Shown here one piece after another: positions 481-61,325 of a stretch of 64,000 nt of DNA. Within the stretch, counting starts at the first letter, position 1. Each line of letters begins with the position of its first letter. The notes under the pieces are model-generated. The model did not search any database and had not been told where the DNA came from. It saw only the letters and a program-made list of their open reading frames with translations. The stretch is taken from contig NC_043011.1 of the NCBI RefSeq assembly GCF_006345805.1, positions 62,074,464 through 62,138,463 on the forward strand, written 5' to 3'. A program made the position numbers and the translations under genes. Origin of the DNA: Octopus sinensis. Its lineage: Eukaryota.

Positions 481-2548
481 CCCAGTCGGGGCCACGGGTT
501 ATGGCCTGACTAGTCTTGCCGGGTCTTCTCATGCACAGCATACTTCCATAGGTCTCGGTCTCTAGACATTTCCTTAGTGAGACCTAAAGTTCGAAGGTCG
601 TGCTTCACCACCTCGTCCCAGGTTTTCCTGGGTCTACCTCTCCCACAGGTTCCCTCCACTGCTAGGGTGTAGCACTTTTGCACACAACTATCTTCAGCCT
701 TTCTTGTCACATGACCATACCAGCGCAGCCGTCTCTCTTGCACGCCACAACTGACGCTTCTTAGGTTCAGCTTTTCTCTCAAGGAACTTACACTCTGACG
801 ATTATGAACACTGACATTACACATCCATCGGAGCATACTGGCTTCATTTTTTGCGAGCTTACGCATATCCTCAGCAGTCACGGCCATGTTTCACTGCCAT
901 GTAGCATGGCTGTACGTACACATGCATCATACAGTCTGCCTTTTACTCTGAGCGAGAGGCCTTTTGTCACCAGCAGGGGTAAGAGCTCTCTAAACTTTGC
1001 CCAGGCTATTCTTACTCTAGCAGTTACACTTTCAGCACACCACCCCCGCTACTGACTTGGTCTCCTAGGTAGCGGAAGCTATCAACTACTTCTAGTTTGT
1101 CTCCCTGGAACGTGGCAGAAGTTGGTCTCTGCATATTTCCAGTGTTTATTGCTCCTGAGCATTTGCCACAGACAAAAACTATTTTCCTAGTTAGCCTTCC
1201 TTTGACATTGCTGCACCTCTTATGTGTCCATAGCTTACACTTGGTGCATCTTATAGAGTTTCTACCTACACCTTTTTTACAGATCGAGCAGGGCCATCTA
1301 CCTGAAGGCGTTTGTGATTGATCTACCTCCTACTTATTAGAACTTGGTTTTGGCTAGGTTGATTCTAAGGCCCTTCGATTCTAATCCTTGTTTCCACACC
1401 TGGAACTTCTCCTCCAGTTCTGATAGTGACTCAGCAATTAGAGCAAGGTCATCAGCATAGAGGAGCTCCCAGGGGCAACCTGTCTTGAATTCCTCCGTTA
1501 TTGCCTGGAGGACTATGATAAATAGGAGGGGACTGAGGACTGAACCTTGGTGGACCCCAACCTCTACCCGGAATTCTTCACTGTACTCGTTGCCACCCTC
1601 ACCTTACTAGCAGCGTCTCTGTACATGGCTTGCACAGCTCTCACCAACCATTCTTCTATCCCTAGTTTCCTCATTGACCACCAGATAAGGGACCGGGGGA
1701 CCCTGTCAAAGGCTTTCTCCAAGTCAACAAAAGCCAGGTACAAGGGCTTATCTTTGGCTAGGTATTTCTCCTGCAGCTGTCTTACCAGGAATATAGCATC
1801 AGTAGTACTTTTCCCTGGCACGAACCCAAACTGCATATCATCTAAGGTAACTCTCTCTCTAATTAGTTGGGCTACAACCCTCTCCGTAACCTTCATTACC
1901 TGATCCAGCAGCTTGATGCCCCTGTAGTTATTTGTCTCTCTAGGCGCGTCGCCTTTACCTTTGTAGCAGTTGACTATTATGCTGCTACACCAGTCATTGG
2001 GTATGACCCCCTCGTGTATCACCTGGTTAACTATACGGGTGACTAAGCTATAGCCGACACCACCAGATATTTTGAGCATCTCTGCAGTAATTCCTGATGG
2101 GCCTGGGGCTTTCCCTGTTTTCATGCTTCTAATTGCCTTATCTACTAAGGAACTGTTAACTCGGATTGCTGGTCCCTCTGTTGGGTCGACATTCGGCAGA
2201 CTCTCTTTATCCCATTCATTTTCTTCATTCAGCAACCTATCATAGTGGCGTCTCCAAGTCTCTCTCTTTGCACCCTCATTAAGTGCAAGTGAACCGTCCT
2301 CCTTGCGAACACATTTCTCTCCTACCACGTCACGATTCTCTCTCACACACTGTCTTGCAACACGAAATACCTCAAGTCTTTCATCCTCACGACGCAGGAC
2401 ATTGGCAAATTTTTCCTTCTCTGCTTCCCCTCTGGCTAGATAGACCTGTCTCCTGGCTTCCCTTCTGGCAGACTGATACACTTCCCTGCTACCACCGTTC
2501 TTCCAGGCCTTCCAAGCCTGTTTCTTTTGTCTAATAGCCCTGTCAACA
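1..2548 (-). mobile_element. 5'-truncated RTE-clade LINE: reverse transcriptase region plus 3' UTR, defective
   Basis: Minus-strand translations give RT motifs NYRGIKLL, QFGFVPGKSTTDAIF, FVDLEKAFDRVP, GVHQGSVLSPLLF and LLYADDL, and the RTE C-terminus RRLRWYGHV...GRGRPRKTWDEVVKHDL. 1-nt frameshifts near 1594, 1040 and 890. Stop at about 510; 3' UTR continues past position 1. No endonuclease domain in the window. Confidence 0.95.
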
Positions 2549-2815: not shown

Positions 2816-3470
2816 TAAACACCAATTAGAATAAATTTTATTGTCCTCAAACATATCAAAAGTTTAAAACTCATCCACCCAAACCAAGTATTTCTCAATT
2901 CAAATTGAGAAATATTTGCCCCCCCCTCTCTCTCACTCTCTCTTTCTCTCTCTCTCTCTCTCTGAGGTTCTCTCTTCCTTCCTCTTTCTCTCTTTCACAT
3001 TTTAGCCCACCCTGAATTAAAAACTATGAAAACAGGCAGTCACGCACCCGTCCCACCCCCTTTTCATCTACCCTCCATTTATCAGTCATAACATGATGGT
3101 ATTTCACATATAAAAGTGGGTTCCACTTCTCCCCACCACCATCCACCCATCCACCCATCACCTACCTTCTGCCCTCCCCCCATCCTCCCTTCCTCCCTTC
3201 CTCCATCTCTCGAAATCCATGACAATCTGTGAGATGTCAATATTCCATTTAGTAATTAAGTGAGAAGGTCATTAGGTAACAGAACCACCCCTTCCCCCAC
3301 CCCACAACCGACACACATACGCATGCCTCACCACCCCACCTCCACCCATCACCACATCAATATCCCATCGGGTTTTTTTCTTCTCAATATATGGCACCTC
3401 CCATGTAATTACATAATAACATCCTCCATCATCTGACCTCTACAAAATCTAGACAATGAGAGCAACCTAT

Positions 3471-6509: not shown

Positions 6510-6725
6510 TTAATAAAAATGGTAAGACAACAAAAGAATGAAAGAGACCTCGATATTATGTAAATAGAGGAATTTATCTGTAAAAGTAACATGTGACAAT
6601 TATTCAGTAGCCATGATGAAACTCTGAGTTTCAGAACGCTATGAAAAATAACCATTATACAAAGGGAAATTACAGTGTGATTGACCACTATTATGACAAA
6701 AGAGCTATTTGAATGACCGCTAAAT
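6510..6725 (-). mobile_element. Short PLE-type element family X, copy with ribozyme core deleted
   Basis: Reverse complement matches 6864-7090 and 27338-27590 but jumps from agcgtt directly to ctgaaactc. Confidence 0.75.
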
Positions 6726-6863
6726 AAAGGATGCGAGTGAAGATGTGTATATTTTCAAGTGAGGGTGGATGAATGTATGCATATGCATGTGGGTGTGCGG
6801 GTGCACATGTGTAGGTATGAACAGGCGCACTAATGCGAATACTATGAACTTTTTACTCCCTTA

Positions 6864-7090
6864 CTTAGCAGTCATTTGAATAGCTCTTTTATCTTAATAA
6901 CGGTCAATCACGCAGTAATTTCCCAGTCAATCACGCAGTAATTTCCCTTTGTATAATGGTCATTTATCATAGCGTTTTTCCGATGGCCGGATAACTGAAG
7001 AGATGGCAGCATGGATTTCCACCCCGGCATCCGAAACTCGGAGTTTTATCATGGCTACCGAATAATTGTCGCATGTCATATTTACAGATA
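6864..7090 (+). mobile_element. Short PLE-type element family X carrying a hammerhead motif
   Basis: Homologous to 6510-6725 (-) and 27338-27590 (+). Internal ~22 bp tandem duplication of gtcaatcacgcagtaatttccc at about 6903-6947. Confidence 0.75.
6984..7056 (+). ncRNA. Type I hammerhead ribozyme candidate, core intact
   Basis: Stem I gataa(6990-94)/ttatc(7046-50), extendable through tggccg/tggcta. CUGAAGA at 6995-7001. Imperfect stem II gatg/catc. GAAAC at 7033-37. Stem III ACU-cgg-AGU. GUU cleavage triplet at 7043-45. Confidence 0.7.
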
Positions 7091-7811
7091 TATATATATG
7101 TATGTATGTATACTTATATATATATGCCTTTAACCATATCAGCTCCAGTCAAACTTTCCAAATCATGCCATTATGTTAATTGATGATGATGATGTGTGTG
7201 TATCTTCTCCAAGTTGAGCCCCACCAACTGACAAGCTGCATCTCTGCTGATAAAATAAATGCTTCGTTTATTTTTCTAACAAATTACTCGTTCATTTCTT
7301 CCATTAACACCTTAGCTTGAGAATTACAAAATCTAATCTGTAATTTCCATCTAATTTTCCTGAGAAATTACAGCCTATGATCTTTGTTTGTGTGTGTGTG
7401 TTGCCATGTGTTTATCACACACCCATTTATTAATGTTGTGATGACATGATGTTGGGTCTTTAATAAATTCACAAGCCACACCTCAGCTCTTAAACAGCTA
7501 AAGCAAAAGGAACCCCCCACTTCTTAACCAGGACTGCTAGAAAGAACTAGTTAAACCTGTATCGAATTGCATTGAGTCATATAAAATAATGGAGTCATTG
7601 AGTCATTCTGTTACAAATATATCATGCCAAGCAACAGGAATGAAAGGATGGTCATTTTGGGGCATCTTAGGCAAATGTCTTGTACTATAGCCCTGGGTTG
7701 GCCAAAACCTTGTGTATGGATTTAGTAAACAGAAACTAAAAGCAGTTCATTGTATGTAGACATACACACACACACACTCACTTACCCAAGTGCACATACA
7801 CTCACATAGAG

Positions 7812-18565: not shown

Positions 18566-18824
18566 CTTGAGTGTTGAGTTCATCACTTCGTGCTAAAAAC
18601 AAAGAGACAAACCCCTTCTTACCTACTTCAAAGAAGGCCAAGAAATTGTAAATATAAATACTTCTAATAATTGATTATTAAATATAAATACATAAAAACT
18701 TACTGAATAATTAACATAAATTTGTCAAATCTAAATTACTATATTATAGTACATTATTTACATTATTTACTTAATTTACATTATTTACATTTGATGGATA
18801 TTTGTCTTCATCTTGTTTGTTGTT

Positions 18825-18870
18825 AACACAACGTTTCAGCTGATGTACCCTCCAGCCTTCTTCAGGTGTC
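18825..18870 (-). ncRNA. Minimal type I hammerhead ribozyme candidate, core intact
   Basis: Minus strand reads gacac-CUGAAGA-A-ggctg-(10 nt)-cagct-GAAAC-GUU-gtgtt. Stem I 5 bp, stem II 5 bp, palindromic loopless stem III (AACGUU). Confidence 0.75.
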
Positions 18871-18920
18871 TTGGGGAAATTTCAAACCTGGGTTCTCATT
18901 CCTAAGGTATTTTTCAATGC

Positions 18921-39717: not shown

Positions 39718-41306
39718 GTATATACATATATGGTAGGCACGTGCCATCAGTAATTACTCAGGGTAGGCAGTTGTTGACCTTTATGTAGTAAAACACACAA
39801 AAATAAGCAAAAGACAGGCGTGCGACTGAGTTTACATCTGCCTTTATAGCGTGTAAAGACAATGTTGTAGGAGTGTACCCAGCACGTGTGCTACAGCATT
39901 ACTATGCGTAGCTTAAATACTGTGATTGAAAGGCAAGGGTGAATTATGCCTACCTAATCTATGAAAAAATAAAATATTTTGCATTTTATGCAGAGTAATC
40001 AGAGTAACCTTCATAATTTTATTGAATTAGGTGCATATTTTGCCATCAAGGGAAAATGTTGGTATTGATTTATTTTATTCAAGGTAGGCACTGGGTACCT
40101 TGCCAGCCCTGGTGGCACATCCCTGATACGTATGTATATGTAGACGTGTGGCCGAGTGGTTTGGATGTTGTTTTCAAGAATGCTACATCATTGGTTCAAT
40201 TCCTGGACCAAGCTGTGCATTGTGTTCTTGAGTAAAGCACAACATTTCTCGTTGCTCCACAACCATTTTGACATCTGACAGGTGACACACTTGTTCACCT
40301 GTTCAGGCAATGTTTGTTTGGTGGAGGGAGTGAGCTAACGTACATCACATTTCTTTGGTCATTATAAACAAATCATTTGTGCAGGTCGGTCAGTAAACAC
40401 CAAACGTGCATACATCGTATATACATCCATACAAGTGTATGTATGTGGAGTGGAGTGCTTCCATCTGTTGATATCACATGATGCTTGTAAATGATTATTG
40501 TTCACCTCCAGAAACGTTAGCACCCCCGGGCGAAATGCTTGGCAGTATTTTGTCTGCCGTTCTGAGTTCAAATTCCGCCAAGGTCGATTTTGCCTTTCAT
40601 CCTTTCAAGGTCGATAAATTAAGTACCAGTTATGCACTGGAGTAGATGTAATCGACTTAAACCATTTGTCTGTCCTTCCTTGTGTGTAGTAAAGAAATAA
40701 ATCTTCTCTGAAAAACTTGTCAAGTCCTGGAGAAATATGAAGTTGAGAGTATAATTTGAGGGATTAAAGTGTTATTTCTAGCAAGTTGAATGATCATTTC
40801 GAAGTACCTTTGTTTATTCATTTCTCTTTTTTTTTTAATAAACTCCTTAGAGTGTAATTTTAGATAGATTGTGCTGCTATTTTTAGCAGGTGGAATGATC
40901 ACATAGTGGTAACCCTGGCCCTTTTTCTGCTTTATTCCCCCCCCCCGGTGTTTGGTTTATGAGAGATTTGGCTATTTCCAGCTGACCATTTAGGCCCCAT
41001 AGATGCCCCTCTGTATACACACACTCACACACGCACACAATGAACTCCTTGCCTTCTTTGTTTCCTTGCCCTCAACACAAACAGTGTTCTGGGTTCAGAG
41101 AGATCCTATCAACGGTCTCTGTGTGCTGTTGTTCTGTGGCACCAGCTACTTTCAGGGAGCAAAACTGGTTTTGGTAGAGTGATCAAAGACACAGCATCAC
41201 TGTGTTGGATGTTGTCTTTCTTCAGTTTAATGAGGTCAATGGAAGAACCTTGAGATAGTTTTCACATTCAATGATACAAAGAGACACACAGCTACTACTG
41301 CTACTG

Positions 41307-42468: not shown

Positions 42469-42899
42469 ATATGTATATAATTTGTGTATAATATAATATA
42501 ATGTAACATAATGTTTGTTATATTGTACTTTAGTGCAGATCTTTATATTTCTAACCTAAACTGTACGAAATAAGTGGATGTAAACACTTTGTCTTTATGT
42601 CAAATATATTCACTGAGAGAAAAGGGATCAGCTGGACTGGTTTCAATCCTGTGTTGGGATTTTATCAACAGCTTAGATATCTCTTCACGTCTTCAATGAC
42701 ATTGCTTATAAACCCTCCATTTGCTTAGTAAATTGCACAGACCAAATCGCATAGATCATGCATCCTGTTTCCTATTTCATCACTATTGTTCTGCTGTTCA
42801 GCACTGTCACTCATCTCCTGCACACCTCTCATTGCTTGTGAGCTCCACTCAGCCACTCTCATTCACTCTTCTAAAATGCAAGTAGATATTGCCTCACAG

Positions 42900-45502: not shown

Positions 45503-46342
45503 ATGAACGTGTCAGAATGTATCGACCTGAATTCCAACGCCACTTCCTCCAAGAGCCCATGGAATTTGCCAGTAACTGTGATTCTCTCTATAGTGTCTAT
45601 CATACTCATGGTTTGTATAATCGTGGGAAACTTTCTCGTGATCACAGTCATCCTACGACACAAAGGGATGCGCACCAGGACGAATCTGTTCCTGCTCAAC
45701 TTAGCCATAGCAGACTTGCTTGTAGGAATGCTAATGGCACCGTTTACCCTTATTACAATCATCTCTGGTCGGTGGATCTTTGGAGAGCGGTTTTGCAATG
45801 TGAACGGCTTCATGAATGCGCTGTGCTACATAACTTCTTGTCACACACTCATGTACATTAGTGTACACAAGTACTTTTCTATCACACGCCCATTCAGCCG
45901 GTTCATCACCATCTCACGCATTTTCATAATGGTGATTGCTGCCTGGACCTGGGCAATATTTTGTGCCACAATGACAATCACCGGACTGACGAGCGTCTGC
46001 TTCAAATATGGTACTTCGCAATGCGGTCCTCTCTACCCCAACGACAAGGAAAGCTATATCCACCATACGATTATTCAAGTGACAGTTATTTTAATTCCGC
46101 TTTCTGTTATGGGATTTACCTACATCAGCATGTACCGCGAGATACGTGCGCATACAAAGCGTCTACAACAGAACACCCGACTAAGGAAAGATACCATTTT
46201 AGCTCAACAGAAGAAAGTGATCTTCACACTGTTTATTGTGCTCGCCTGTTTCATCCTTTGTTGGATGCCTTACCATATATATTCCATGTATGTCTCGCTC
46301 AATAAGGCTACGGGGAACTTTAACACCATCATGAACCCAATA
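45503..46342 (+). CDS. Orphan class A (rhodopsin-like) GPCR, coding exon 1 (TM1-TM6, ECL3)
   Basis: 280 codons with six hydrophobic helices: GN (TM1), LAIAD (TM2), Cys3.25, HKY at the DRY position, W in TM4, ECL2 Cys, IP..M...Y (TM5), CWMPY (TM6). N-glycosylation sequons NVS and NAT. Phase-0 donor ata|GTGAGT at 46343. Confidence 0.95.
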
Positions 46343-46449
46343 GTGAGTAGACTTTAATTTTATTTTCCTTCTTTTTATTCTTTTCATTCTTGTATTCATT
46401 TTCGACATTGAACTTGTAAGCAACCATGCTACACTCAAAACCTTCATGA

Positions 46450-46775: not shown

Positions 46776-47613
46776 TTATATTTATGTGTGTGTGTATATA
46801 TATATATATAAATAAATATATAATGTGGCACTCTGTTGGTTACAACGGCAAGGGTTCCAGTTGATCTGTTCAACGAAACAGCCTATTTGTAAAATTAACG
46901 TACACAGACACATGTACCCTTAACGTAGTTCTTGGGGGGAGATTCAGCGTGACAAGGCTGGCCCTTTGAAATGCATGTACAAGAGAAACGGAAGGAAAGA
47001 GTGACAGAAAGTTGTGGTGAAAGAGTACAGCAGGGTTCACCACCCCCTCGTGAAGCTTTAGGTGTTTTCGTCCAATAAACACTCACGACACCCAGTCTGG
47101 GAATCAAAACCACGATCCCACGACCACAAGTCCACTGCCCTAACCAGTGGGCCATTGCAGATCTCTCTCTCTATACACGCACACACAGATATACAAACTC
47201 ACATATAAATACAGATGTCTAAATACATTTTGGAGAATTGTTAAATTCCACCTGTTCCTGATTAATTTGCTATCTTTCCAGCTTTATAACTTAAGATCTA
47301 AGGTGGGTATTTCCTTTACCTCTTTCACTTTTTTCTTTTTACTTTTGCGATTTCCGTTTTTTTAACATTCCACATTTTCTGTGTTTCCCTTCTCAACGTT
47401 TCACATTTCTTCTCCCCTTCAATTTTTTTGTTTGTTATAACATGTGGTTTGTGCCTGATGAATGCGTTTGAGGTATTTCTCAACATATGAAACTACTGGT
47501 AGCAAAAACATGTATTGTGTCTAGTAAATAATATTTATCTCTCACCAGATTGAGTACTTTTTTAGTTTATCTTACCATCATGGAACACCACATGATATAT
47601 ATATACACATACG

Positions 47614-48147: not shown

Positions 48148-48271
48148 GTCTACTTGTTTGCTTACCTGAACAGTGCTTGCAACCCAATCATCTATGCCCT
48201 TCGAAGTGAAGCATTCCGCAAAGGTTACCAAGAGATACTGTGCATGAAGAAAGAAGTAATATTTAGTGAGG
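48148..48271 (+). CDS. GPCR coding exon 2 (TM7 and helix 8)
   Basis: Acceptor ttctcttcttgcag at 48147. Phase 0 continues NTIMNPI|VYLFAYLNSACNPIIYALRSEAFRKGYQEILC, with NPxxY and helix 8. Phase-1 donor g|GTAAGC at 48272. Confidence 0.92.
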
Positions 48272-48440
48272 GTAAGCTTAACATTGCAGTCAGTTTCTAT
48301 GTTTGTATATATATATACATACATATATGTATATATAAATGTGGGTGTGTTTAAATATATATGTGTGTATGTGTGTGTATATACATATATATATAAATAT
48401 ATCCAACTTTTGTATTGTCATCATCATCATATAATTGCAT

Positions 48441-53977: not shown

Positions 53978-54440
53978 CATCGTTTAACGTCCGTCCTCCA
54001 TGCTAGCATGGGTTGGACGGTTTGACCGGGGATCTGGGAAGCCAGAAGGCTGCACCAGGCTCCAGTCTTATCTGACAGTGTTTCTACAGCTGGATGCCCT
54101 TCCTAACGCCAACCACTCCGTGAGTGTAGTGGGTGCTTTTTACGTGCCACCTGCACAGGTGCCAGGCGAGGCTGGCAACGGCCACGGTCGATTGGTGTAT
54201 TTTATGTGCCACCGGCACGGAAGCCAGACGAGGCGGTGCTGGCATCGGCCACGAGTCGGATGGTGCTTTTTACGTACCACCAGACCAGGGATCCTGGCTG
54301 GTTCAATTCGATTTCGATTTCGCTTGCCCCAACATGTCTTCACAAGCAAGGGGGTTGGCATGGGTGCCTGTTGTACGGTCAGATTGGTGTATTTTACGTG
54401 CCACCGGCACGGAAGCCAGTGGAGGCGGCGCTGGCACATA
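53978..54440 (-). mobile_element. RTE 3' UTR/tail copy
   Basis: Reverse complement of the 26380-26748 tail with several gtgccaccggcac modules. Confidence 0.9.
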
Positions 54441-55029
54441 AATATACATGGGTGAGTGTATATATGTGTATAATATATATGTGTACAATATATATATATA
54501 TATATGTGAGCATGTGTATTTATGTATAATATATACATCAATGTTCACTAGAGGAATTATTCTGGCAAGTTAGGGACCTTACATTTGATTTACCAGGGAT
54601 GCAGAAGCGTCTTGTATAAAACATTGTTACTACCACCAGCACCACCACCACAACCACCACCACCAGCACAATCACCACCACAACTACCAGCACAACCACC
54701 GCCAGCACAACCACCGCCACAGCCACCACAACCATCACCATCATCATCATCCTCCTCATCTTGTTCTGTTTCCCCTCTTATTTCTCCTCTTCAGTGTTGT
54801 CATCATTTCTACTTCTTCCGCCACCATTACTACCACCTCCACAATAACCACCGTACTAACATCATCATCATCGCTAATATCATCATTACTATTGCATCGC
54901 CTAATTTGACTCACCTTGCCAGATTGGAAAATGGACATTAAGTGATGACAATGATGCACAAAAGTACATATACATACTAACATGCATATATATATGCGTA
55001 TGTGTGCTTATATATCCACACACACACAC

Positions 55030-57009: not shown

Positions 57010-57731
57010 TTTATTTATTATTATCATTATTATCATATATATATATATATATATATATTTAGGGAAGCAAGCTTTTTACAAACATGCATATATACACACA
57101 CACACTAGGGGCTTCAATACCGTTTCCATCATTCCAGATAATTTGCTTACAGGTAACTGGTCAGCTTCAGAGTATAGCAAAATCCCTTGGTGAAAGGTGC
57201 TGCACATCAGGACTGAACCCCCAAAACTATGTAATCGCAAGGCAAACTTCTTTATCACACAGCCATATCTGCACCTCTATTTATTTATTTATTTATTTAT
57301 CTTTTTTATAAACCCTACGTCTTCAAGATAGCATGTTAGCACTCATTAAGCTAAATGACATTGTAAATTAGATTCTTGATGGTAGTGTAACTTCATGGGC
57401 GTGGGGGGAGGCAGGGTGTTGAGGTAGAATAAAGGAGACTAGAATCTTCTGTTTGTGATGAAAACATGTAAAATTCCTGAAAACAAGACATGTTTGTCTG
57501 CAACAAAATAATACAAATAGATTAAATAGGTTTCTTTTGCTGTATTTTCAATTTACTGATGAGATTGTTGATTCAGATCAGTGAAAGGAAGTTAAATGAG
57601 TTTCCTCACAGGACCATCACCTCTGACATTTCACGCTTAATTCCAAGTTTTTTTGTTTTTTTGTTTATAATGAGAATCAACATTGACATTTCTCTTATCT
57701 CTATTTTAAAATGCATTTTGTTTTTCGTTTT

Positions 57732-57813
<82 letters not shown>

Positions 57814-58029
57814 TGTTTGTATATCATCCCCATCATCATCTTCGTTAGCATCGTAATAAAGCATCTGTCATCTTCATCATCGTCATCATGTTCATCATCA
57901 TCTTTATTGGCATCATCACCATCACCATCATCATCATCATCATCATCAACTTCCATTTCTGGTATGAGTTGAATGAATTAGGATAGCCATACTCTGAATC
58001 AATTTTGTTACTGCTCACTAGAACATTCC

Positions 58030-58125
<96 letters not shown>

Positions 58126-58139
58126 TAAAAAAATAAGGA

Positions 58140-58700
58140 TAAAACTAAGTTTATCCAGAGAGATATTTCAAATTACTATGCTTCTATAAACCCAATACTA
58201 CTCAATAAGGCTCTGATGTTTGCAAAGGAAAACTCAGAAATTGTACTGCAAAACCATACAGGTCTGGAACCAATAGATGTGGCCTATGTTTAGAAGAATT
58301 TCACAGGATTTTCACATCCGAGGGTAATGTAATAAATGCTAGACAGGAGCAAGCATTGGGATCCTTCCACATGAGGAAATTCACATTTGCCAAGTATAAA
58401 TTAAAAACTATCGTGTAAACTATACAAGGTTTTGAGATGATGGATTAAAAATGATTATCCAATAAGAACTTGAAATAGAGATTGTTCACATCTGATTTAA
58501 CAGACAGCTCTACATTATACAACGCAGAGTTTATGAAAGATAATCTTTAAACAGCCATACCGACAGATATCAAGTTAAGACCCTGAAGAGACTGCACCGT
58601 TTTTATAGTAAGGTTGTAATAGCAACGGTGACTAATCGGTGTGGTAGAAACATGGGTTGGTCTTAAAAGGCAGAATATAATTATAGAATTAAAGGTAATG
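58140..58700 (+). mobile_element. Internally deleted Penelope-like element: RT fragment fused to endonuclease C-terminus, then pLTR
   Basis: KTKFIQRDISNYYASINPILLNKALMFAKE resembles the PLE RT motif FIQFDI..FYPSI...LL.KAL.FA. In another frame it joins AKPYRSGTNRCGLCLEE...INARQE...HMRKF, the Cys-containing C-terminus of PLE GIY-YIG domains. Confidence 0.8.
58575..58666 (+). ncRNA. Type I hammerhead ribozyme candidate with long stem II loop
   Basis: Perfect 8-bp stem I ttaagacc/ggtcttaa. CUGAAGA at 58583-89. 9-bp stem II actgcaccg/cggtgtggt. GAAAC at 58647-51, loop augg, GUU at 58656-58. Stem II closing pair is a G-A mismatch. Confidence 0.75.
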
Positions 58701-58766
58701 CTATTGCTACTTTGGAGTAATCATTATTTTTAATATTCCCAATATAAAGATATATATATATATATC

Positions 58767-59018
58767 AATAAGCAACAGAAGGTAATGCAGTACGATCGTT
58801 TCAAGCAACTCCATTTAATTGAACAATGCAACCATCTTGGAGGTTTTTGGTAAAATTATACTAATGCGTCCATCTGTTTTAATTCAATTTGATTCAATGT
58901 ATTTGTGCTGCTGAGGACAGCCCTGCATTTAAATTGATGTAATGGTTGCATTGTTCAATTAAATGGAATTGCTTGAAACGATCGTATTGCATTACCTCTG
59001 GATATCCTGTTGCTTATT
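58767..59018. mobile_element. MITE-like element with long terminal inverted repeats
   Basis: 58781-58835 pairs with 58942-58996 (55 bp, 2 mismatches); extends via aataagcaacag/ctgttgcttatt. No TSD identified. Confidence 0.8.
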
Positions 59019-59104
59019 TTGATTTTAATCACCTTATTTTGAAACTGTATGGATAATACCATACTAAATTCTGGTGCCTCAACTTAAGTACCTAATTCAT
59101 CTGA

Positions 59105-59190
<86 letters not shown>

Positions 59191-59191
59191 G

Positions 59192-59243
<52 letters not shown>

Positions 59244-60330: not shown

Positions 60331-60359
60331 AACAGGCAGAACCTGAACATGAAATCTGA
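60331..60359 (+). CDS. Speculative GPCR terminal exon candidate (x-QAEPEHEI*)
   Basis: Strong acceptor cattcctttgtccccatcctctttacag, phase-1 compatible, TGA at 60357-59, AATAAA at 60367. No homology support. Confidence 0.25.
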
Positions 60360-61019
60360 ATTGTAAAATAAATTTTAAAGCACCCCAGATCTTATTGTCC
60401 AGTCTATTTAATTTCATGAAATTTGAAAGTGAAAGTAGATTCAAACTGCTTCCCAGCTTGTTTTGCATCACAGTCCAGTTTTGTGCATGGCCTTTTCCCC
60501 ACAGACTGAGGGATCTTGTGCAGAACAGAACACAATAGCATACACCATATAGAATTTAATTATTACGTATCAAATACATATATATATATAATATGTATAT
60601 AAATACATATAATCCAAAAATACCTTGCAGTTAGTGTTACTCAGTAAAACAGAAATGAAATTTGAAAATTTACTCTTTATGTGTGGCCAAGTACTAGCCT
60701 GCAACTTGGTGGTTGGGGGACTCGTGCCTTTCAGTATTATAGATAAACCCCTAGTGGGCCCTAGTGTTATGAAGTTTCACTTCATTTTCAGTCAAAGCCC
60801 CTGATGAATGTCACTTCTGAAAGCAGCATGCAGTCATCTAAATCATTTTTGCTTGTTTTTCTTATTTTGATATTCTCCTTCAGTAATATCTTGTCTTTGT
60901 TTGGATACTCCTGACAATGAAAAGGCACAACAAATGCACATACACATGAATGCATACATGTGCACATATCCAAGATGCACATATATACAATCATGCACGC
61001 ACACACATATACGTATATA

Positions 61020-61325
61020 CACCGGTGGCAGGTAAAAAGCACCATCCGACCATAGCCGTTGCCAGCTTTGTCTGGTCCCCGTGTCGGTGGCACGTAAGAA
61101 GCACCATCCGATCGTGGCCGTTTGCCAGCCTCGTCTGGCACCTGTGCCGGTGGCATGTAAAAAGCACCCACTACACTCACGGAGTGGTTGGCGTTAGGAA
61201 GGGCATCCAGCTGTAGAAACATTGCCAGATCAGACTGGAGCCTGGTGCAGCCTTCTGGCTTCCCAGATCCCCGGTCGAACTGTCCAACCCATGCCAGCAT
61301 GGAAAGTGGACTTTAAACGATAATG
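61020..61325 (+). mobile_element. RTE 3' tail copy
   Basis: Three ggtggca modules and ccatgccagcatggaaagtggactttaaac(gat)n. Confidence 0.9.

What the first reader, a model, noticed from the sequence alone, without database searches (positions are those of the whole stretch)
58575..58666. Well-formed hammerhead in sense orientation, possibly inside the GPCR pre-mRNA
Seen: 8-bp stem I, intact core, 9-bp stem II with a 37-nt loop that offers an alternative helix (caccgtt/aacggtg). It lies ~160 nt after the PLE ORF end. The G10.1-A11.1 mismatch and GUU triplet probably lower activity. Inference: if the GPCR's last exon is downstream (for example 60331), intronic self-cleavage or a conformational switch could modulate receptor mRNA output.
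Basis: partly seen in the sequence, partly recalled or inferred. Interest (0 to 1): 0.7.

Follow-up and report, generated by a model that had tools for sequence, protein, structure and literature searches.

The report
Retrotransposon-borne hammerhead motif in octopus intron
The hammerhead ribozyme motif is real, but it is the usual cargo of a broken Penelope-like retrotransposon that landed in a TA repeat inside an intron of an octopus receptor gene, and nothing suggests the gene uses it.

Summary
Window 58575-58666 (+) has an 8-bp helix I, CUGAAGA and GAAA cores, a 9-bp helix II with a 37-nt loop, a 2-bp helix III and a GUU cleavage triplet. No shuffled window came close. The motif lies 156 nt after the stop codon of a decayed endonuclease C-terminus. 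That C-terminus matches the 'Hydra' clade of Penelope-like elements (PLEs).

The roughly 625-bp element is 5'-truncated and flanked on both sides by (TA)n. It is absent from the orthologous site in Octopus bimaculoides. Five cnidarian-type Hydra-clade families carry a hammerhead at the same relative place, so this is a transposon hammerhead, which is a known kind.

None of those relatives has the canonical G10.1-C11.1 pair; all have U.U. The G.A mismatch here may therefore not be a simple lesion.

By orthology the motif is in intron 2 of an aminergic-type GPCR gene, in sense orientation. A regulatory role has no support: the insert is lineage-specific, the window holds three or four more such motifs, and PLE hammerheads cleave poorly without their own protein. 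Interest is low.

The parts
58033..58122 (.). (TA)n(CA)n(TA)n microsatellite, 5' flank and target of the insertion
   Evidence: Sequence. O. bimaculoides has (CA)n(TA)n at the orthologous empty site, L006 20072-20113.
58123..58747 (+). 5'-truncated Hydra-clade Penelope-like element: endonuclease C-terminus plus 3' non-coding region
   Evidence: It sits within the 767 bp (58033-58798) that stand where O. bimaculoides has 41 bp, with colinear flanks. It is flanked by (TA)n on both sides. No second copy exists in the window.
58149..58418 (+). Decayed C-terminal part of the GIY-YIG endonuclease ORF. It has one internal stop at 58206-58208, and TAA at 58416-58418 is the terminal stop.
   Evidence: The translation ...AKPYRSGTNRCGLCLEE..INARQEQ..SFHMRKF carries the CxxC-E-N-(C)xH pattern. 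tblastn with coral endonuclease proteins gave E=3.9e-10 and 49% identity over 51 aa. BLASTP against P0221 gave E=2e-10. phmmer against 1.8 billion proteins gave E=3.8e-5. The pattern is as described for the Hydra clade in PMC8557442.
58575..58666 (+). Type I hammerhead ribozyme motif, with predicted cleavage between U58658 and G58659
58600..58636 (+). Loop II, 37 nt. It has its own small hairpins and a second CGGUG copy that gives the alternative helix.
58748..58765 (.). (TA)n, 3' flank of the insertion
45503..46342 (+). GPCR exon 1 (TM1-TM6 and the start of TM7), donor GTGAGT at 46343
   Evidence: Pfam 7tm_1, E=5.6e-48. 94% identical to O. bimaculoides XP_014778053/XP_052830450.
48148..48271 (+). 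GPCR exon 2 (TM7 NPxxY and helix 8), acceptor TTGCAG|, donor G|GTAAGC. Intron 2 starts at 48272 and runs past the window end.
   Evidence: tblastn, 97.7% identity over 43 aa; splice sites; exon 3 not in the window.

Best explanation
What it is. The motif is the hammerhead ribozyme (HHR) that Penelope-like retrotransposons carry in their non-coding flank. Here it survives in a roughly 625-bp, 5'-truncated and decayed copy of a 'Hydra'-clade PLE. That copy inserted into a (TA)n microsatellite in intron 2 of an aminergic-type GPCR gene. The insertion happened in an octopus lineage after its split from O. bimaculoides.

Shown:
- the motif and its non-randomness;
- the endonuclease remnant on the same strand;
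- the (TA)n flanks;
- the empty orthologous site;
- the intronic, sense position;
- the presence of an HHR at the equivalent place in five related families, with compensatory changes in helix I.

Inferred mechanism, from the published model for PLEs. In an intact, tandemly arranged element, the HHR folds (often as a dimer, or with help from the element's own protein). It cuts the long transcript after H17 and so helps trim unit-length element RNA.

Inferred present state. This solitary relic has only a 2-bp helix III, a G.A at 10.1/11.1, a competing lower-energy fold and no cognate protein. It most likely cleaves very slowly or not at all, and has no effect on receptor mRNA.
For: - Motif anatomy and chance control.
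- Endonuclease remnant on the same strand, ending 156 nt upstream.
- Relatives P0141 and P0221 show the CxCX5C linker, a GIY...YIG core, and CxxC and CxH around E and N. These are the traits listed for the Hydra clade in PMC8557442, which also reports short elements, HHRs and insertion into (TA)n.
- Empty site in O. bimaculoides, with colinear flanks.
- HHRs lie 50-155 nt after the stop codon and about 45-90 nt before the 3' end in related families A-E.
- On these relatives all 5 helix-I pairs show changes on both sides. 87% of cells are paired, against 20-52% when the partners are slid.
- PLE HHRs are known to be abundant, mostly solitary in truncated copies, and weakly active: PMC4209133.
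- The one PLE HHR tested with its protein needed that protein, was dispensable for insertion in vitro, and left no RNA-seq ends at the cut site: PMC11167929.
- Gene structure by orthology.
Against: - No sibling copy of this particular family could be fetched, so there is no family consensus and no covariation for this motif itself.
- Rfam models and two covariance models built from relatives do not score it.
- Its helix II (9 bp plus a 37-nt loop) and its helix III (CAUGGG, poorly palindromic) differ from the relatives' compact helix II and their 3-bp palindromic helix III.
- Pfam does not recognise the remnant. It gives only a sub-threshold GIY-YIG hit for one relative, so clade assignment rests on motifs and on a paper's description.
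- Activity was not measured. A very stable helix I and helix II could still allow slow cleavage.
Confidence: 0.85

Rival explanations
1. Exapted intronic ribozyme or switch. The sense-strand HHR cleaves the GPCR pre-mRNA in intron 2, and the alternative helix in loop II toggles activity, so receptor mRNA output is tuned.
For: - The motif is in sense orientation inside intron 2 by orthology.
- The alternative 7-bp helix exists.
- A second sense-strand HHR lies in intron 1.
Against: - The insert is absent from O. bimaculoides, so there is no conservation.
- It carries the marks of a dead transposon copy: stops in the ORF and 5' truncation.
- 10.1/11.1 is non-canonical and helix III has 2 bp.
- The HHR fold is about 2% of the ensemble.
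- PLE HHRs are weak or protein-dependent.
- Slow ribozymes in introns are generally tolerated by co-transcriptional splicing (own knowledge: Dye et al. 2006; Fong et al. 2009).
- The minimum-energy fold uses the HHR helix II rather than the alternative helix.
Confidence: 0.05
2. Non-autonomous PLE derivative or retrozyme. The HHR-bearing segment is a unit of a small element that makes circular RNA and is mobilised by PLEs, not part of a truncated autonomous copy.
For: Animal retrozymes are reported to be related to PLE pLTRs (bioRxiv 10.64898/2026.07.22.740005). The motifs at 47449 and 6989 have no recognisable ORF remnant.
Against: This copy has 270 nt of endonuclease ORF remnant directly upstream on the same strand. 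There is no tandem repeat and no second HHR nearby.
Confidence: 0.06
3. Chance resemblance. AT-rich repetitive DNA happens to give the two core boxes and flanking complementarity.
For: No Rfam match or covariance-model match.
Against: The relaxed descriptor gave 0.037 hits per shuffled window, and none had more than 11 stem pairs against 17 here. The location next to a PLE endonuclease remnant is exactly where relatives carry an HHR.
Confidence: 0.01

Closest known systems
Hammerhead motifs of Penelope-like elements (min-HHRs; Cervera and de la Pena 2014, PMC4209133)
   Same: - Type I topology.
- Sits in the non-coding flank of a PLE on the ORF strand.
- Long helix II and minimal helix III.
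- Mostly found as solitary motifs in truncated copies.
- Abundant in invertebrate genomes: this window holds 4-5 such motifs.
   Different: - G.A instead of the reported highly conserved G10.1-C11.1.
- Helix I is 8 bp, against 4-5 bp.
- Loop II is 37 nt.
- Helix III and its loop are only partly palindromic (CAUG within ACAUGGGU).
Hydra clade of C-terminal-endonuclease PLEs (Craig et al. 2021, PMC8557442)
   Same: - Endonuclease C-terminus with CxxC ... E ... N ... (C)xH.
- Insertion into (TA)n.
- An HHR present downstream of the ORF.
- The clade is reported in Mollusca.
   Different: - Only the last 90 or so codons survive, so the RT, the CxCX5C linker and the GIY-YIG core cannot be checked in this copy.
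- The CxH cysteine is replaced (SFH).
- The HHRs of the cnidarian-type families fetched here are compact (helix II of 3-5 bp, U.U at 10.1/11.1, 3-bp palindromic helix III), unlike this one.
Conserved intronic hammerheads of amniotes (HH9, HH10; own knowledge)
   Same: A sense-strand hammerhead inside an intron of a protein-coding gene.
   Different: Those are conserved at orthologous sites across species, have canonical cores and loop-loop contacts, and are matched by Rfam models. This one is lineage-specific, sits in a transposon and is not matched.
Poseidon PLE hammerhead of Anolis carolinensis (PMC11167929)
   Same: A PLE-borne hammerhead whose own activity is weak.
   Different: That one overlaps the start of the ORF, and it was shown to cleave only with the element's protein. 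Nothing has been measured for this motif.

Membership tests
Hammerhead ribozyme (type I) | Core C3 U4 G5 A6 N7 G8 A9 and G12 A13 A14 | tested here: met
   CUGAAGA at 58583-58589 and GAA at 58647-58649.
Hammerhead ribozyme (type I) | Three helices around the core, with helix I open and helices II and III closed | tested here: met
   Helix I 8 bp, helix II 9 bp, helix III only 2 bp. The fold is 2.1 kcal/mol above the minimum-energy fold.
Hammerhead ribozyme (type I) | A15.1-U16.1 pair and a cleavage-site nucleotide H17 that is not G | tested here: met
   A58650-U58657; H17 is U58658 (GUU).
Hammerhead ribozyme (type I) | G10.1-C11.1 pair closing helix II | tested here: not met
   G58590 is opposite A58646.
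Hammerhead ribozyme (type I) | Match to the curated Rfam hammerhead covariance models | tested here: inconclusive
   No hit at gathering score or at E<=10. The same models also miss the PLE-type hammerheads of relatives and the other motifs in the window.
Hammerhead ribozyme (type I) | Site-specific self-cleavage | not testable with these tools
   Needs in vitro transcription, or mapping of RNA ends.
PLE-associated hammerhead (min-HHR) | Lies in the non-coding flank of a PLE, on the strand of the ORF | tested here: met
   156 nt after the stop codon of the endonuclease remnant, same strand. Relatives have the same layout.
PLE-associated hammerhead (min-HHR) | Belongs to a multi-copy consensus family with compensatory changes within the genome | not testable with these tools
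   There is no other copy in the window or in 48 kb of O. bimaculoides. The genome is not searchable here. Covariation was shown only among related families.
PLE-associated hammerhead (min-HHR) | Palindromic helix III / loop 3, for action as a dimer | tested here: inconclusive
   ACAUGGGU contains the palindrome CAUG but pairs with itself at only 6 of 8 positions. Relatives have clean 3-bp palindromes around one central base.
Hydra-clade PLE | C-terminal GIY-YIG endonuclease with CxxC and CxH around the conserved E and N, and no CCHH | tested here: met
   CGLC-LEE...INAR...SFH. The CxH cysteine is lost. Homology to full endonuclease domains that carry these motifs.
Hydra-clade PLE | Reverse transcriptase and CxCX5C linker | not testable with these tools
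   The copy is truncated at about 58123, and the sequence upstream of it is host DNA colinear with O. bimaculoides.
Hydra-clade PLE | Insertion into (TA)n | tested here: met
   (TA)n on both flanks, and a microsatellite at the empty site.
Conserved intronic hammerhead (HH9/HH10 type) | Present at the orthologous intronic site in related species | tested here: not met
   Absent from O. bimaculoides intron 2.
Retrozyme (non-LTR, tandem units with a hammerhead) | Tandem head-to-tail units, each with a hammerhead | tested here: not met
   Single copy, with no repeat of the unit.

The most novel reading that the evidence does not exclude
Hydra-clade PLEs may carry a distinct hammerhead variant that does without the G10.1-C11.1 pair. 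Five cnidarian-type families have U.U there, this octopus copy has G.A, and another octopus motif has A-U. If such motifs still cleave, for example with the element's protein, the rule that G10.1-C11.1 and its metal site are needed would have a natural exception. Two sense-strand copies in introns 1 and 2 of one receptor gene would then give a natural test of whether weak intronic ribozymes affect mRNA output.
Probability: 0.12. Interest if true: 0.5.

Novelty: new member of a known kind. Interest (0 to 1): 0.22.

Why it matters
For annotation, it shows that this hammerhead is transposon cargo and not a gene-regulatory device. It also fixes the structure of the neighbouring GPCR gene: exon 2 is at 48148, and the last exon lies beyond the window.

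Three smaller points may interest people who work on ribozymes and transposons:
- Hydra-clade PLEs occur in an octopus genome and insert into (TA)n within introns.
- Curated Rfam models miss this whole class of hammerheads.
- The relatives I could fetch consistently lack the canonical 10.1/11.1 pair, which is worth a cleavage assay.

Tried and rejected
- Rfam on the whole window at gathering score, and on 251 bases at E<=10: no hammerhead hit. The same was true for the other motifs and for the relatives. So Rfam is blind to this class and its negative result was set aside.
- Covariance models R1 (coral families) and R2 (coral families plus the 47455 motif), run on the window with filters off: the candidate was not among hits at E<=10. 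R2 did find 6989-7053 and 18822-18871.
- Self-BLAST of 58140-58740 against the window: no second copy.
- phmmer of the 69-aa remnant against 1.8 billion representatives: only two short fragments.
- Two word-indexed homology searches gave hundreds of cnidarian-type endonuclease fragments but no octopus copy.
- A 16-mer scan of metagenome contigs gave chance hits only.
- MAFFT could not align the candidate with the relatives' hammerheads because of the 55-nt helix II, so the comparison was made by hand.
- XP_052830450 (isoform X2) was not on record for locus retrieval. Isoform X1 was used instead.
- Pfam on the remnant: nothing.
- Alignment of the 6960-7095 element with the candidate's 3' region: no real similarity.
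- A literature search for the effect of 10.1/11.1 mismatches gave nothing usable.

Full report
**1. The observation**

At window 58575-58666 (+) the sequence reads as a type I hammerhead:
- Helix I: UUAAGACC (58575-58582) pairs with GGUCUUAA (58659-58666), 8 Watson-Crick pairs.
- Core: CUGAAGA at 58583-58589.
- Position 10.1/11.1: G58590 faces A58646.
- Helix II: ACUGCACCG (58591-58599) pairs with CGGUGUGGU (58637-58645), 9 pairs of which 2 are G.U.
- Loop II is 37 nt.
- GAAA at 58647-58650.
- Helix III: A58650-U58657 and C58651-G58656 close a 4-nt loop.
- U58658 is the cleavage-site nucleotide.

A relaxed descriptor found only this site in the window. In 300 dinucleotide shuffles it gave 0.037 hits per window, and never more than 11 stem pairs against 17 here. 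So the motif is real and not a chance product.

Three qualifications apply:
- ViennaRNA keeps helix II but prefers another pairing for the helix I / helix III strands. The hammerhead fold is 2.1 kcal/mol above the minimum, about 2% of the ensemble.
- Rfam gives no hammerhead hit at any threshold. It also misses clean PLE-type hammerheads.
- Two covariance models built from relatives did not score it at E<=10.

**2. What surrounds it**

In the frame that ends with TAA at 58416-58418, the translation is ...AKPYRSGTNRCGLCLEEFHRIFTSEGNVINARQEQALGSFHMRKF.... It matches a large set of endonuclease fragments:
- tblastn, E=3.9e-10.
- BLASTP against P0221, E=2e-10.
- phmmer against 1.8 billion proteins, E=3.8e-5.

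Longer members (P0141, P0221) show a CxCX5C linker, a GIY...YIG core, and CxxC and CxH on either side of conserved E and N. Craig et al. 2021 describe exactly this for the 'Hydra' clade of Penelope-like elements. They also report that these elements are short, occur in Mollusca, carry hammerheads and insert into (TA)n (PMC8557442). Pfam itself is silent on the remnant and gives only a sub-threshold GIY-YIG hit for one relative.

The remnant covers only the last 90 or so codons and has an internal stop. Upstream of about 58123 there is a (TA)n(CA)n(TA)n tract, and (TA)n follows at 58748-58765.

**3. Comparison with Octopus bimaculoides**

The GPCR ORF at 45503 is 94% identical to O. bimaculoides XP_014778053 / XP_052830450. 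I fetched the genomic locus of that gene as L006.

- Window 57076-58032 aligns with L006 19145-20072.
- Window 58799-59208 aligns with L006 20113-20514.
- The 767 bp between these blocks stand where O. bimaculoides has 41 bp of (CA)n(TA)n.

The element is therefore a lineage-specific insertion into a microsatellite. The 32 bp at 58767-58798 belong to an older inverted repeat of the host, whose left end is deleted in O. bimaculoides.

**4. Relatives carry a hammerhead at the same place**

I fetched DNA around endonuclease fragments of five families. Most come from Tara metagenome scaffolds that hold eukaryotic DNA. Their source organism was not checked; I call them cnidarian-type because the clade is mostly cnidarian.

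Each family has, 50-155 nt after the stop codon and about 45-90 nt before the 3' end, a motif of this form:
- helix I of 4-5 bp;
- CUGANGA, or UUGAAAA in one family;
- U, then a CG-rich helix II of 3-5 bp, then U;
- GAAA, then C, a 3-bp palindrome around one central base, then G;
- U, H17, and the 3' strand of helix I.

Across these families every helix-I pair shows changes on both sides. 87% of cells are paired, against 20-52% in slid controls. This confirms that an HHR is a native part of the 3' region of this clade.

All five families have U.U at 10.1/11.1, not G-C. The second octopus motif, at 47455, has A-U. The G.A of the candidate may therefore not be a simple loss of an ancestral C. 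Without sibling copies of its own family this stays open. One other motif in the window (6989-7053) can be read with G-C.

**5. The gene**

- Exon 1 ends at 46342 (NPI), followed by GTGAGT.
- The true TM7/helix-8 exon is 48148-48271 (VYLFAYLNSACNPIIYALRSEAFRKGYQEILC...), with a good acceptor and a GTAAGC donor.
- In O. bimaculoides exon 3 lies 25.6 kb further on. The extra exon of isoform X2 is also downstream of the empty site.
- No match to exon 3 exists in the window, and the window stays colinear with intron 2 up to its end.

So the motif is in intron 2 and in sense orientation. The exon proposed at 60331 is not supported.

**6. Mechanism**

Cervera and de la Pena proposed that PLE hammerheads trim tandem transcripts to unit length. 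They act as dimers because helix III is minimal, and they found only weak activity in vitro (PMC4209133).

For a Poseidon element of Anolis, cleavage needed the element's protein. It was not required for insertion in vitro, and it left no RNA-seq ends at the cut site (PMC11167929).

The copy here is a solitary relic. It has a broken ORF, a non-canonical 10.1/11.1, a 2-bp helix III and a competing fold. I therefore expect little or no cleavage and no effect on the receptor mRNA. This step is an inference, not a measurement.

**7. Other motifs**

With the loosest descriptor the window has 4 hits against 0.5 +/- 0.7 in shuffles, and model R2 adds a fifth:
- 47449-47509 (+), in intron 1 and in sense orientation.
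- 6989-7053 (+), with an inverted, internally deleted partner.
- 18822-18871 (-), a classical PLE min-HHR with a sibling in O. bimaculoides.
- 42627-42674 (-), weak.

Such motifs are common in this genome, as the literature reports for invertebrates. This further lowers the case for a special role of the one at 58575.

**8. Verdict**

It is wrong about the exon, and unsupported about function. This is a new member of a known kind, and interest is low. One modest lead is the consistent lack of G10.1-C11.1 in Hydra-clade hammerheads.

Noticed in passing
window 47449-47509 (+): A second hammerhead motif in sense orientation, in GPCR intron 1. CUGAUGA is at 47455-47461, 10.1/11.1 is A-U, helix II has 9 pairs with one mismatch and one bulge, helix III is CUA-C-UGG and H17 is A47501. 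It aligns well with the coral Hydra-type motifs and lies about 90 nt before a long (TA)n. Intron 1 is 1805 bp here and 959 bp in O. bimaculoides, which lacks this stretch.
   Followed up: partly
window 6578-7095 (+ and -): A third motif at 6989-7053 (+): GGAUAA CUGAAGA G...C GAAA CUCGGAG UU UUAUC. Model R2 scored it 19.2 bits, E=0.017. It has an inverted, internally deleted partner at about 6578-6720, and both are bounded by (TA)n. This head-to-head layout is typical of PLE insertions.
   Followed up: partly
window 18822-18871 (-); L006 about 42738 (+): A classical PLE min-HHR: bulged A after A9, a 5-6-bp helix II, helix III reduced to CG, and a 5-bp helix I. A sibling copy lies in the O. bimaculoides locus, so this family is shared by both octopus genomes.
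   Followed up: partly
window 42627-42674 (-): A hammerhead-like motif with the U3/A8 core variant (UUGAUAA) and 5-bp helices I and II. It is weak (R2 E=6.4) and may be chance.
   Followed up: no
L001, L002, L007-L016, L019-L025 (3' of the endonuclease ORFs): All five cnidarian-type Hydra-clade families have U.U at hammerhead position 10.1/11.1, and a 3-bp palindromic helix III around a single central base. One family has the U3/A8 core. Rfam models detect none of them.
   Followed up: partly
L025, about 2350-2400 (-) and 3085-3131 (+): The same hammerhead sequence occurs on both strands about 700 bp apart, around a truncated endonuclease ORF. This looks like an inverted duplicate typical of PLEs.
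   Followed up: no
window 58766-58835 and 58942-59010: A host inverted repeat (56 nt at 96% identity, with longer diverged arms) that looks like a MITE. Its left end is deleted in O. bimaculoides, next to the same microsatellite.
   Followed up: partly
window 40626-40697 (+): A weak match (E=0.03) to the same endonuclease region (PVMHWS...), possibly another Hydra-clade remnant. No hammerhead was found beside it.
   Followed up: no
window 1564-2481 (-); 46823-47160; 54000-54455, 60788-61300 and others: Other repeats. A reverse-transcriptase ORF (Pfam RVT_1, E=3.7e-13) is probably from a LINE. A SINE-like insert lies in intron 1. A repeat family shared with many places in the O. bimaculoides locus also recurs.
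   Followed up: no
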